A stretch of DNA of 64,000 nucleotides, from contig ADNK01001276.1 in the NCBI GenBank assembly GCA_000320545.1, positions 144,703 through 208,702 on the forward strand. Reading direction: 5' to 3'. Below are positions 55,605 through 59,053 of this stretch, one piece after another. Every line of letters starts with the position of its first letter. Position 1 is the first letter of the stretch. The notes below the pieces were generated by a model. That model searched no databases. It saw only the letters and a list, made by a program, of their open reading frames with translations, and was not told where the DNA came from. The DNA comes from Bigelowiella natans CCMP2755. Taxonomy: Eukaryota; Protista; Cercozoa. A program made the translations under genes and the position numbers.

Positions 55605-58600
55605 ATGCAGCTTCTTCATCTGTGTTTCGCATTGGCGTCGTCGACTGCCCTTCGGCATTTCCCAGGTACAGAATCCTAATAAGACATTGTAAATGAAGTG
55701 TAATACTTGCAGTGACTCAATTTTTGCTCGCGAAAGGTGTGGAAACACTCTCAAAGGGCTACGACGTCGCAGCAGCGTCTGCATCACGTCTACCTATTTT
55801 TGCATTTTCCTATGAGGAAAATAATACCCAATCTATAACCCCCTTTCATCCCGACGATGTGTACATACTTCCTGATAGAATCATATACGATTCTGGAGAA
55901 GAATACGTCGAGATTGAATACCAACAAACCAGCCTCTCTTTACACGAGTATTATTCTCAACAATTGACGACAGAAACACACCACGGATGGTTCCACTCGA
56001 AGAGTACAACTACGTACGACTTTGCTCATCACGCGATGCTTCGTAATGAGAGTAAAATTCTCCACTATAAATACTTAGAACTTTTCAGCCTCGAGGTCAA
56101 CACACTTCCGCCTTCGAATTTGCACCCGACCTTTGCTGAGGCGGTGCAAGATTTACCGACCTATGACGTTAATAATAGCACTTCCTCAGAAGCGTATCGC
56201 AATTTCTTTGGGAATTTTGGGACCGATTTTATTTATCTATTGAAAATGGGCGCACACATAGGACAACAGACTTGGTTTCATTCATGTCTCGTCGACACAT
56301 TTGGGGAACATTGGGTAACAAAGGAAGAAAGAGGTTCTTTCTTCGGACTTATCAATTGGAACTCTGGACATCATTCTGACGTAGGCAAACGCAATGCTAC
56401 TTGGGAAATCTCTACAGACAGCTTGGCAACGCTAGATGGAGGTGATACTATTCAGTTTGAACCTTTCAAGTACGGGTCGCTGCAGAAGTGGATGAACACC
56501 ACTCACTTATCACCTGCACCAATCCAGTTCAAGACGATGCATATATCAAGTATCGTTGCCTCTCTTGATCCGTCTAAATATGAGGATGTGGAGAAAGCTC
56601 GCGCCGATTACATGAATTCTCACCTTTCAGAGGTGCAAAAAAGAGTTGCAGCTCTCATTCCAAAGAATCCAGCTCCACTTCCATCATGGTGTAAGCCCAA
56701 CAAAACTTTAAAAAGCCCACCAAAACTTCCAACTATTGTCCCAGTCAAAGCCAGGCCAAACACTCGTTTTTCACCAGTGAGAAAGAACAAGATTGCTGTT
56801 CCTGAAAAGTTTGATCGCGTGTGTAGTGATCCATTACTCAAAGGGTTGAACAGCGGGGTGGGCTTAGGGTTTGATACTTTGAAAGGCACACCAGTGAGTA
56901 AACTTCCGATAGTACAATGGCACTGTTCCCATGGAAAAACCTGGGTGGAACCTATCAACGGCACCGTTTATAATGTCCCGGATGAAATTACCGTTTTTGG
57001 ATATCCTTCCGCCGATTTTGACACATCGAACAGGATCTCTAAATCGATCTACGCATTTCAACAATCGGAAGCTGACTGGAGTTCGTTCAGCTTTGGTATT
57101 CCTGGGGTGTTTGGATTCTCAGATACAACTGCAACAGCTATTGCAAGAGAACTTTTGAAAAGTCATAATCGCACCCTCTACACCGCGGAGCGAGTTTTCA
57201 CAGAATTCACGACTTCAATTTCCACTGATGCGCAGCTTCCAGATCTTGATCCTCGCTTTTTGGAAGCGGTCTCCAGACTTCCTCCTTCACGTTCCATCCC
57301 CGAAGAAGCTGCTTTATATGAATTATTTATTAACACTTTCGGAGATGTGGTTGCGACGACTGCTTCATATGGAGGGAAGCTAATGTACTTCGTTGCAGTG
57401 AACGAGGAGTTATATGCAAAGCACACAGAGGAATGGGTATATCACCAGGTTCAGCTGTGGGTCGCCTATGAAGATCTAGGCCTGGGCATTGGTGCCTCAT
57501 CAAACCACAGGTAAAAACAGGAGTTGACAGAGTGCATGAATGCCAATTTTGCCGGGCTTTGCTAAAAAAAGATGTAAACAATGATAGACGCTCACGTATT
57601 CTCTCTCTCTCTCTCTATTTATATAAATAAGTATTTATATTCATACACATTTACTATTTTGCTGGCGTGTGTGTGCCACCCATACATGCACATACAGAAC
57701 AAATACTCTAAACTTTTGAATAAGTGATTCCAACGTTTATCAAATGATTCCAACGTTTATCAAATCTTCAGCGATGAAAAGATTAACCAAGACTTCATCA
57801 TGAACATGGAAAACATCACGAGCATCATCGGTGGATCCACTAATACTTCGTACCAGACCTTCTCTAAAACGATTCGTGCAAATCCTGCGCTTGTACGACC
57901 AACTTTCACCGAAATCCACCATTTTGTCCAAGACCCCGTTAAGAAGAAGATTTTATCAGAAGCTATTTACCAACGTCGAGCAGCGGCTGCCCACAATAAT
58001 ACCTCCCAAATAGATGGATCATCGCCTTCCAATTGTGCCTTTAGCGATGACTTGCCTGTTATTCCGGGATTACAAGACTTGTCACTTGGATTTGACGTAC
58101 GCACAGGAAAGAGCATTCAGCCAGATGGCACAACGCAGCTTCTCCAAGTTCTCTCGATGACAACCTACGATATGCAGCAAACCTATGTGATAAGGGGGAA
58201 TCCTCAATGTTATAAAGTCCCCGATGGCCTTGAGATTCAAGATATTCCAGAGACTTCTTACTTCAAGCTATGCGACAGCATATTCACATCATACGATCAG
58301 GTACTCCACGAACAATCCACGCGTTTTAACGTGGACGTTGGGTTTCAAAAAGGAACTTTCAAAGCTGGAGTCAACATTAGTCACTACGACTACCGTATGC
58401 ACTTTGAAGTGGATGCAAAAGCAATGTACTCTGGATTCTCAAAGCAAGTGTTTCCACTCTTCAAGCTCCAGAGCTACCCTCCGATGCTCGGGCTATCCAC
58501 AATTAATGAGGGACTTTCACGTTTGTTTGATAAATTGGTGTATCCTATTCAAACGCCCGAGGATGCAGCATTATACTCTCTCATTATTAAAAAATGGGGA

Positions 58601-59053
58601 ACCAGCTATGTTGATAGCGGTTTGTTCGGAGGCATGGCGCATATCATGACATTTACAAATAACTCTTACATGAAAAAATTGGATGAGCACGATCAATCCA
58701 CTCAGATCTCATTTTATGCAATGTTTGAAAATCCGGATTTTGGAATTGATGGAGGCTTTAATACATCTGAGATTCTCAAGCATTTATCACAAGAAATGAG
58801 GAACAGTTCTACAGCCGAAAACTTTCTAATCGGAGGAATTGAGTCCAAAAATGGCACACAATGGGCTGCATCTCTCCCTTTCTATCCTGGGTTATATAAC
58901 GCTACTAGCACAACTTCACTTGCAAAGGCCTTCGAACCGGTTGACGCCAAAAAAGCAGCATACTTACAAAAGGTTTTGGAAGCTTATGCTTCACAACCAC
59001 TGGGTCAAAATCTTTATCCTGGTGATCCTGGTTTTCCCCCAGTTGAAATATAA
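55605..59053 (+). CDS. Secreted triple-MACPF-domain protein (~1046 aa; exons 55605-55665, 55713-57510, 57772-59053)
   Basis: Signal-peptide-like MQLLHLCFALASSTALRHFP. Two GT-AG introns join the 600-aa and 417-aa ORFs in frame (3141 nt total). Three GYD/GFD starts and three signatures: FGTDFIYLLKMGA, FGDVVATTASYGG, WGTSYVDSGLFGG. Confidence 0.9.
57725..57764. repeat. Exact 20-bp tandem duplication (tgattccaacgtttatcaaa x2) near the end of intron 2 of the triple-MACPF gene
   Basis: Directly visible. Confidence 0.9.

What the first reader, a model, noticed from the sequence alone, without database searches (positions are those of the whole stretch)
55605..59053. Three tandem MACPF domains in one polypeptide, hidden across two ORFs
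Splicing 55665^55713 and 57510^57772 gives one open 1046-aa chain with domains at about 55745-56620, 56830-57975 and 58050-58995. The domains are highly diverged from each other, so this is not a recent triplication. Linker 1 is Pro/Lys/Arg-rich (KARPNTRFSPVRKNK) and linker 2 is short (QRRAAAAH). The chain may be a pre-linked three-subunit arc or a polyprotein cut into three subunits. Most characterised MACPF proteins have a single domain.
Basis: partly seen in the sequence, partly recalled or inferred. Interest (0 to 1): 0.8.

Follow-up and report, generated by a model that had tools for sequence, protein, structure and literature searches.

The report
Three-MACPF secreted protein gene, split in databases
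This is one real three-exon gene of a marine alga for a secreted protein made of three different perforin-like (MACPF) pore-forming modules in a row; it belongs to a large, unstudied family of tandem-MACPF proteins in single-celled eukaryotes, so it is real and interesting but not unique.

Summary
Exons 55605-55665, 55713-57510 and 57772-59053 (+) join through two GT..AG introns into an open 1046-codon frame. It encodes a signal peptide and three MACPF domains.

The middle domain is split by intron 2. Its two halves match complementary parts of Pfam PF01823 and of a family profile. A 65%-identical relative from a metagenome reads straight through the junction with no indel.

AlphaFold models of domains 1 and 3 are confident and match perforin, MPEG1, C6/C8 and bacterial MACPFs. 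Domain 2 was not folded whole, because the joined step was left out by rule.

The three domains are old paralogues (17-25% identity), and each falls in a different deep clade.

The architecture is not unprecedented:
- A 2020 review lists three-MACPF proteins in Theileria and Babesia.
- My library search found 12 three-domain and 54 two-domain relatives in protist transcriptomes and genomes (Carpediemonas, Echinamoeba, Soliformovum, MMETSP).
- The same domain types recur there in other orders.
- Their linkers are enriched in dibasic, convertase-like sites.

These four MACPF domains (three here, one in the head-to-head neighbour gene) are the only ones found in the 91-Mb genome.

The likely function is a heteromeric pore-forming unit. 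Whether it acts as one chain or is cut into subunits is open.

The scan also noted this stretch as s1-742879 and s1-742844.

The parts
55605..55665 (+). Exon 1: ATG plus a hydrophobic signal peptide (20 codons plus 1 nt). An in-frame upstream ATG at 55530 is an alternative start.
   Evidence: Sequence read; ORF 55530-55679. The relatives P0002/P0003 also have a hydrophobic stretch about 12-15 residues before the first domain.
55666..55712 (+). Intron 1, 47 nt, GT..AG, phase 1.
   Evidence: It is needed because exon 2's frame is closed by TGA at 55694-55696 and has no ATG before codon 109.
55713..57510 (+). Exon 2: domain 1, linker 1 and the N-terminal two thirds of domain 2.
   Evidence: Open frame 55712-57514; Pfam results.
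55721..56680 (+). MACPF domain 1 (D1-type). Signature FGTDF-x6-GA. It ends in the D1-type P-x-W-C motif (PSWCKP).
   Evidence: Pfam 60.5 bits. Family profile positions 4-308. AF2 pLDDT 86, pTM 0.83. Foldseek hits to perforin, Mpf2Ba1, C8 beta and MPEG1 at probability 1.0. Clade HMM 242 bits against 102 for the next clade.
56681..56827 (+). Linker 1, about 49 residues, rich in Pro/Lys/Arg (…KARPNTRFSPVRKNK…). It has no RxK/RR site.
   Evidence: The relative L002 carries a Cys-rich insert here.
56828..57510 (+). MACPF domain 2, N-terminal part (D2-type). Signature FGDVV-x6-GG.
   Evidence: Pfam 35.6 bits, profile 15-107. Family profile 2-217, E 2e-51; this piece was not in the seed. 65% identity to P0158.
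57511..57771 (+). Intron 2, 261 nt, GT..AG, phase 2. Low-complexity, with a 20-nt tandem duplication before the acceptor.
   Evidence: Its position is confirmed by colinear, intron-less relatives P0004/P0158/P0160.
57772..59053 (+). Exon 3: C-terminal third of domain 2, linker 2, domain 3 and the stop codon.
57772..57995 (+). MACPF domain 2, C-terminal part.
   Evidence: Pfam 22.4 bits, profile 149-211. Family profile 224-304. 46% identity to P0158 residues 213-283.
57996..58051 (+). Linker 2, short.
58052..59014 (+). MACPF domain 3 (D3-type). Signature WGTSY-x6-GG. The chain ends 12 residues later with no accessory domain.
   Evidence: Pfam 36.9 bits. AF2 pLDDT 83, pTM 0.80. Foldseek hits to Plu-MACPF, perforin, MPEG1, C6 and C8 alpha at probability 1.0. 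Clade HMM 165 bits against 135.
53410..55245 (-). Head-to-head neighbour gene: N-terminal membrane anchor, EGF domains, a fourth MACPF domain (NBR-type) and a Cys-rich tail. It is a possible partner.
   Evidence: Pfam. This is the only other MACPF in the genome. Its domain type is fused behind D3- and D1-type domains in P0057, P0072 and P0096.

Best explanation
What it is. A single three-exon nuclear gene (55605-59053, +) encodes a secreted 1046-residue protein. The protein has a signal peptide followed by three different, anciently diverged 'minimal' MACPF domains of about 310-320 residues each (D1-, D2- and D3-type). They are joined by one Pro/Lys-rich linker and one short linker. There is no lipid- or receptor-binding accessory domain.

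How it most likely works.
- Shown: the gene model, the three domains, and the MACPF fold of D1 and D3 with two helical clusters (TMH1, TMH2) around a bent sheet.
- Inferred: the chain delivers three non-identical MACPF subunits in fixed 1:1:1 stoichiometry into the secretory or phagosomal pathway. There they assemble side by side, as C6-C7-C8-C9 do in the complement membrane attack complex, and each domain contributes two beta-hairpins to a membrane pore.
- Inferred: the membrane-anchored EGF-MACPF protein encoded head-to-head next door may be a fourth subunit or the membrane-targeting component.
- Inferred: the likely biological role is killing or permeabilising bacteria or prey, or defence. 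The relatives whose source organism is named come from free-living protists.
For: One gene:
- Canonical splice sites and compatible phases.
- Complementary half-domains across intron 2 in Pfam, the family profile and the whole-genome search.
- Colinear, intron-less relative P0158, with the junction codon Ser matching its Ser211.
- Relatives L001/L002 hold signal peptide, D1, linker and the start of D2 in one frame.

MACPF fold:
- AF2 models of D1 and D3.
- Foldseek against PDB: perforin, MPEG1, C6, C8, Plu-MACPF, Mpf2Ba1.
- Family profiles hit TgPLP1, perforin, C6 and C8 at E 1e-19 to 1e-27.

Heteromeric unit:
- Each domain belongs to a different deep clade.
- The same types recur fused in relatives in fixed neighbour relations: D3-D1 x17, D2-B x9, D2-B-D1 x6, D1-D2-B x1, D3-D1-NBR x3.
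- These relatives have genuine signal-peptide N-termini.
- Pfam counts three MACPF stretches in six of them.

Locus:
- All MACPF domains found in the 91-Mb genome sit in this 5.6-kb locus.
- D3's TMH1 has a clear alternating hairpin pattern.
Against: - I could not retrieve a transcript of this gene. The databases hold the two ORFs as separate proteins.
- Domain 2 was never folded whole.
- All three domains lack the His of the MACPF signature.
- Amphipathicity of most TMH regions does not differ from shuffled sequence.
- The TMH regions are short (38-49 residues).
- No membrane-binding domain is present.
- The side-by-side packing test gave no verdict.
- Some MACPF proteins are not lytic.
- The domain-type tree is a quick FastTree of 20-30%-identical sequences, rooted at midpoint.
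Confidence: 0.6

Rival explanations
1. Polyprotein. The chain is a precursor that a kexin/furin-type convertase cuts in the linkers during secretion. This releases three separate MACPF subunits in equal amounts, which then co-assemble or act separately.
For: - In 79 inter-domain linkers of family members, dibasic pairs number 111 against 56 +/- 7 in within-linker shuffles.
- RxK/RR motifs number 13 against 1.8 +/- 1.3.
- RxK/RR density is 0.25 per 100 residues in linkers against 0.011 in domains. Examples: RRKR, RKRR, KRKR.
- The window has QRR at the end of D2, and VRK/KAR in linker 1.
- Single- and two-domain secreted relatives exist.
Against: - The window's linkers have no full RxK/RR site.
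- Only 10 of 79 family linkers have a full RxK/RR site.
- Many relatives have linkers of 3-16 residues with no basic pair.
- No proteomic data exist.
- This reading is compatible with the heteromeric-pore reading; it changes only the covalent state.
Confidence: 0.25
2. Non-lytic MACPF protein. The domains keep the fold but serve adhesion, signalling or development, as in astrotactin, BRINP, Torso-like or plant CAD1/NSL1, rather than forming pores.
For: - The signature His is missing in all three domains (sequence).
- There is no amphipathic signal in most TMH regions.
- There is no membrane-binding domain.
- Astrotactin-2 is among the Foldseek hits.
Against: - The best sequence and fold matches are lytic members: perforin, TgPLP1, C6-C9, MPEG1, Mpf2Ba1.
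- Both helical clusters are present in the models of D1 and D3.
- D3's TMH1 alternates strongly, and D2's TMH1 has an aromatic/Gly hairpin-like SFSFGIPGVFGFS.
Confidence: 0.12
3. Two separate genes, or a gene broken by a 261-bp insertion. Here 55712-57514 and 57800-59053 would be expressed separately, as in the database models, or not at all.
For: - EukProt and MetaClust hold the two ORFs as separate proteins of 492 and 417 residues.
- No spliced transcript could be fetched.
Against: - Both models would start or end inside a MACPF domain. P0001 begins at codon 109 of D1 and ends in mid-D2. P0156 begins in mid-D2.
- The insert has consensus GT..AG ends in the right phase.
- The flanks are colinear with an intron-less relative to the residue.
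- Both long frames are intact.
Confidence: 0.03

Closest known systems
Predicted three-MACPF perforin-like proteins of piroplasms (Theileria annulata TA18285, Babesia bovis BBOV_III000410; PMC7522308, Table 1 and Fig. 1)
   Same: A signal peptide followed by three MACPF domains in one polypeptide. The review raises the same idea, that fewer monomers would be needed per pore. These proteins are uncharacterised too.
   Different: - The piroplasm proteins are larger, at 140-143 kDa.
- Apicomplexan PLPs characterised so far carry an apicomplexan-specific beta-rich C-terminal region. Here the chain ends 12 residues after domain 3.
- Whether they are homologous fusions or independent ones was not tested, because I had no sequence by reference.
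- Those organisms are obligate parasites, whereas this one is a free-living alga.
Uncharacterised tandem-MACPF proteins of free-living protists: Carpediemonas membranifera KAG9394743.1 (P0015, two domains), Echinamoeba exundans (P0186), Soliformovum irregulare (P0009), an MMETSP transcript (P0063, three domains), and P0020/P0031/P0043/P0057 (three domains)
   Same: - The same family by sequence (E 1e-10 to 1e-56).
- The same minimal unit of about 310 residues.
- Signal peptides, the same paralogue types, and the D1-type P-x-W-C end motif.
   Different: - The window's order D1-D2-D3 was not seen in any of the 151 relatives.
- The others are D3-D1(-NBR), D2-B(-D1) or D1-D2-B.
- Many have Cys-rich or convertase-site linkers that the window lacks.
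Complement membrane attack complex (C6, C7, C8 alpha/beta, C9) and perforin / MPEG1
   Same: - The MACPF fold, with the best PDB matches by fold and by profile.
- The MAC is the known case of a pore built from several different MACPF paralogues in a fixed order. C8 alpha and beta pack side by side before insertion.
   Different: - MAC subunits are separate polypeptides with TSP/LDLa/EGF modules.
- Perforin has a C2 domain and MPEG1 has a membrane-binding P2 domain. This protein has none.
- The resemblance is in how it may work, not in orthology.

Membership tests
MACPF (Pfam PF01823) | A significant match to the family profile above the curated cut-off, for each claimed domain. | tested here: met
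   D1 60.5 bits, D2 35.6 + 22.4 bits in complementary halves, D3 36.9 bits; the cut-off is 21.5. Family profiles hit solved MACPFs at E down to 2e-27.
MACPF (Pfam PF01823) | The fold: a bent central four-stranded sheet flanked by two helical clusters (TMH1/CH1 and TMH2/CH2). | tested here: met
   Met for D1 and D3: AF2 pLDDT 86 and 83, pTM 0.83 and 0.80. Helices lie between the long strands. Foldseek probability is 1.0 to perforin, MPEG1, C6, C8 and Plu-MACPF. D2 was not folded, because the joined step was left out.
MACPF (Pfam PF01823) | The signature (Y/W)-G-(T/S)-H-(F/Y)-x6-G-G. | tested here: inconclusive
   D1 has FGTDF-x6-GA, D2 has FGDVV-x6-GG and D3 has WGTSY-x6-GG. The spacing and the Gly residues are kept, but His is absent in all three. 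The family consensus keeps GTH.
Pore-forming (lytic) MACPF proteins | TMH regions long and amphipathic enough to refold into membrane-spanning beta-hairpins, and oligomeric pores. | tested here: inconclusive
   The TMH regions are 38-49 residues long. Only D3's TMH1 exceeds shuffled controls for period-2 hydrophobic moment. Pore formation is not testable with these tools.
Apicomplexan perforin-like proteins (ApiPLP) | A C-terminal apicomplexan beta-rich (APC-beta) membrane-binding region after the MACPF domain. | tested here: not met
   D3 ends at 59014 and the stop codon is at 59051. No further domain was found by Pfam.
Tandem minimal-MACPF family of protists (defined here hits) | A signal peptide plus two or more units of about 310 residues that match the family profile end to end, drawn from recurrent paralogue types. 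| tested here: met
   The units match profile positions 4-308, 2-217 + 224-304 and 2-299. Clade HMMs built without the window's sequences assign D1, D2 and D3 to three different clades.

The most novel reading that the evidence does not exclude
Protists across several supergroups may build MAC-like hetero-oligomeric pores from a fixed cycle of ancient MACPF paralogues. The paralogues are encoded as one-, two- or three-domain chains whose domain order is circularly permuted between lineages: D1-D2-B against D2-B-D1, and D3-D1 elsewhere against D1...D3 here. That pattern is what a periodic ring would tolerate. Some chains would be cut at convertase sites in the linkers. On this reading the alga's locus is a complete minimal set: three soluble subunits in one chain plus one membrane-anchored subunit from the divergent neighbour gene.
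Probability: 0.2. Interest if true: 0.8.

Novelty: new variant of a known kind. Interest (0 to 1): 0.5.

Why it matters
Nearly all studied MACPF pore formers have a single domain, and the complement MAC is the textbook heteromeric case.

A covalently linked trio of different MACPF modules fixes stoichiometry and perhaps order. It would therefore be a compact system for asking how heteromeric MACPF pores nucleate and close.

The family found here is broad, unstudied and present in free-living protists. This bears on how old perforin-like killing is in eukaryotes.

Practically, the gene is mis-modelled as two proteins in public protein sets. Domain-architecture surveys therefore undercount tandem MACPFs.

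Tried and rejected
- Complex prediction on D1 + D2 N-part + exon 3 as three separate chains, with D1 as the partner. The verdict was 'no answer': a control with chain 3 replaced scored the same. This is not evidence either way.
- Word-index search with the exon-3 protein: blank.
- Two scans of JGI metagenome contigs, one with the exon-3 protein and one with the alignment A6: no relatives. I could not see domain 3 of the close relative or its neighbours.
- Exact look-up of P0156 on contigs: nothing on record. No transcript evidence was obtained.
- L003's downstream ORF turned out to be a repeated fragment of D2, not D3.
- ESM Atlas search by features: only generic MACPF clusters, with recognition below the useful range.
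- Period-2 hydrophobic moment of the TMH regions: uninformative except for D3's TMH1.
- Literature searches for tandem MACPF in free-living protists or Bigelowiella: nothing relevant beyond the piroplasm review.
- As a result, D2 was never folded whole and the full chain's inter-domain packing was not modelled.
- Considered and rejected: a recent internal triplication. The identities are 17-25% and the domains fall in separate deep clades.
- Considered and rejected: the two-gene reading. It would leave half-domains.
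Full report
**Setting.** The window is G000:C2461:144703-208702 of a 91.4-Mb, 3736-contig eukaryotic assembly. Its GC content is about 45%. Earlier agents of this scan name the organism Bigelowiella natans. I used that only as a lead and did not verify it. This stretch was also noted by the scan as s1-742879 and, together with its neighbour, as s1-742844.

**The observation.** Two long open frames lie at 55712-57514 (600 codons) and 57800-59053 (417 codons) on the + strand.

- Read directly, the proposed introns have canonical ends. 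Intron 1 is 55666-55712: CAG|GTACAG...TTGCAG|T. Intron 2 is 57511-57771: CAG|GTAAAA...TCTTCAG|C.
- Exon lengths of 61, 1798 and 1282 nt sum to 3141, which is 1046 codons plus stop. The phases fit: codon G|TG = Val at junction 1 and AG|C = Ser at junction 2.
- Exon 2's frame is closed upstream by TGA at 55694-55696, and its first ATG is codon 109, inside the first domain. An upstream coding exon is therefore needed.
- Exon 1 supplies an ATG and a hydrophobic signal-like peptide. An in-frame ATG at 55530 is a possible alternative start.

**Three domains and one gene.**

- Pfam PF01823 (cut-off 21.5 bits) matches four pieces:
  - 55715-56689: 60.5 bits, profile positions 15-209.
  - The end of exon 2: 35.6 bits, profile positions 15-107.
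  - The first 80 codons of exon 3: 22.4 bits, profile positions 149-211.
  - 58013-59050: 36.9 bits, profile positions 52-214.
- The two middle pieces are complementary halves of one domain. A family profile of 310 positions, built from database relatives, places them at positions 2-217 and 224-304. A six-frame search of the whole genome places them at 23-251 and 246-332 of another profile.
- Independent confirmation comes from metagenome relatives P0004/P0158/P0160, which are 65% identical to domain 2 and have no intron at this place.
  - P0158 residues 55-210 align with the end of exon 2, up to its last whole codon.
  - P0158 residues 213-283 align with exon 3 from its second codon.
  - That leaves exactly the junction codon, which encodes Ser opposite Ser211 of P0158.
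- Relatives L001/L002 carry a hydrophobic leader, domain 1, linker 1 and the start of domain 2 in one frame. They have an intron elsewhere in domain 2.
- Public protein sets hold the two window ORFs as separate proteins: P0001 (492 aa) and P0156 (417 aa), both in EukProt and MetaClust. Those models begin or end inside domains and are best read as ORF calls on unspliced sequence.
- I could not fetch a transcript.
All work was done exon by exon, by reference.

**Fold.**

- AlphaFold2 with family alignments gives domain 3 a pLDDT of 83 and pTM of 0.80, and domain 1 a pLDDT of 86 and pTM of 0.83.
- Both models show long bent strands with two helical clusters between them. TMH1 spans about 38-46 residues and TMH2 about 44-49.
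- Foldseek against the PDB returns Plu-MACPF, GNIP1Aa, perforin, MPEG1, C6, C8, C9, TgPLP1 and Mpf2Ba1 at probability 1.0.
- Profiles of the D1-type and D2-type alignments hit perforin-1, TgPLP1, C6, C7 and C8 at E 1e-19 to 2e-27.
- Domain 2 was not folded whole.
- The MACPF signature is kept in spacing and glycines but lacks its His in all three domains: FGTDF-x6-GA, FGDVV-x6-GG and WGTSY-x6-GG.
- A period-2 hydrophobic-moment test of the TMH regions was significant only for TMH1 of domain 3. Lytic competence is therefore inferred, not shown.
- The chain has no accessory domain. It ends 12 residues after domain 3.

**Relatives and how unusual this is.**

- An exhaustive search of 1.84 billion representatives with the exon-2 protein found 231 relatives at E <= 1e-3.
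- Of the 151 listed, my family profile finds three near-complete domains in 12 and two in 54. Pfam confirms three MACPF stretches in P0057, P0096, P0072, P0020, P0031 and P0043, and two in P0015 and P0005.
- Sources include an MMETSP transcript (P0063), EukProt transcriptomes of the amoebozoans Soliformovum irregulare (P0009) and Echinamoeba exundans (P0186), and NCBI proteins of the metamonad Carpediemonas membranifera annotated only as 'MAC/Perforin domain' (P0015).
- Many start with signal peptides followed directly by the first domain.
- In the literature, a 2020 review lists Theileria annulata TA18285 and Babesia bovis BBOV_III000410 as predicted three-MACPF proteins. It asks whether fewer monomers would then make a pore (PMC7522308).
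- I found nothing on tandem MACPFs in free-living protists or in Bigelowiella.
- The architecture is therefore real but not unprecedented. What has not been described, as far as I could find, is the family.

**Domain types.**

- The window's domains are 17-25% identical to each other.
- In a tree of 216 domain segments, each of the three domains and the neighbour's domain falls in a separate deep clade, with SH-like support of 0.93-0.99.
- Clade-specific HMMs built without the window's sequences or its close orthologues agree:
  - D1: 242 bits against 102 for the next clade.
  - D2N: 190 against 121.
  - D3: 165 against 135.
  - Neighbour: 62 against 47.
- D1-type domains also share a C-terminal P-x-W-C motif, which is PSWCKP in the window.
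- Among relatives the types occur in recurrent orders: D3-D1 (17), D3-D1-NBR (3), D1-NBR (5), D2-B (9), D2-B-D1 (6), D1-D2-B (1, P0020) and D2-D1 (4). 'B' is the sister group of the D2 type.
- The window's order D1-D2-D3 was not seen elsewhere.
- D1-D2-B and D2-B-D1 are circular permutations of each other, and both have true signal-peptide N-termini.
- The neighbour's domain type is fused behind D3- and D1-type domains in other organisms. One such protein, P0057, ends in a transmembrane helix. The window's neighbour has an N-terminal anchor.
- By the usual fusion ('Rosetta stone') logic, this suggests the types work together.
- These inferences rest on a quick FastTree of very divergent sequences and on non-independent relatives, so I rate them as suggestive.

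**The locus.** Pfam and family-profile searches of the whole genome find MACPF only here: D1, D2N, D2C, D3 and the neighbour at 53410-55245 on the minus strand. The two genes are head to head, about 360 bp apart.

**One chain or three?**

- In 79 inter-domain linkers of the family, dibasic pairs number 111 against 56 +/- 7 in within-linker shuffles.
- Furin/kexin-type RxK/RR motifs number 13 against 1.8 +/- 1.3. Their density is more than 20 times that in the domains. Clear examples are RRKR, RKRR and KRKR.
- This supports proteolytic processing in part of the family.
- The window has only QRR at the end of domain 2, and VRK/KAR in linker 1.
- Many relatives have linkers of 3-16 residues with no basic pair.
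- A three-chain complex prediction, with the exons kept apart and D1 as the partner, returned 'no answer'. It is not used as evidence.

**Verdict.**

One gene and three anciently diverged MACPF domains are supported. The choice between arc and polyprotein is unresolved. The rarity was overstated.
- The most likely mechanism is a secreted, stoichiometrically fixed heteromeric MACPF assembly unit, possibly working with the membrane-anchored neighbour (confidence about 0.6).
- Rivals are a processed polyprotein (0.25, compatible with the same end state), a non-lytic MACPF role (0.12), and two genes or a broken gene (0.03).
- Novelty: a new variant of a known kind.
- Interest: 0.5.

Noticed in passing
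window 53410-55245 (-): The head-to-head neighbour gene has an N-terminal membrane anchor, EGF domains, a MACPF domain and a Cys-rich tail. Its MACPF type is the third domain of D3-D1-NBR fusion proteins in other organisms (P0057, P0072, P0096). P0057 ends in a transmembrane helix.
   Followed up: partly
window 57511-57771: Intron 2 holds a (CT)n run, AT-rich low-complexity sequence and a 20-nt unit (tgattccaacgtttatcaaa). The unit is repeated twice in tandem at about 57726-57765, just before the acceptor.
   Followed up: no
window 55530-55604: An in-frame upstream ATG at 55530 would add 25 residues before the hydrophobic leader. Which start is used is unknown.
   Followed up: no
window 55712-57514 and 57800-59053: EukProt and MetaClust hold these two ORFs as separate proteins (P0001, 492 aa; P0156, 417 aa). 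Both are cut inside MACPF domains, so the public models mis-split the gene.
   Followed up: yes
L002:338-1250 and L001:1341-2427: In the metagenome relatives, a Hint (Hedgehog/intein-type) module ORF runs in frame into the leader of the MACPF homologue. It is probably a separate upstream gene read through by the ORF caller.
   Followed up: no
L002 about 2230-2500; P0004/P0158 C-terminus: The relatives carry Cys-rich (knottin/EGF-like) inserts in linker 1 and after domain 2. The window's protein lacks them.
   Followed up: no
window about 55940-56040: TMH1 of domain 1 is unusually His-rich (ETHHGWFHS...FAHHA), and this is conserved in the relative L002. It could be a pH-sensing feature, but this was not tested.
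   Followed up: no
window 16227-22326 (+) and 27404-31827 (-): Large retroelement-type ORFs of 901, 1091, 357 and 1114 codons. The scan has noted them elsewhere as Gypsy copies.
   Followed up: no
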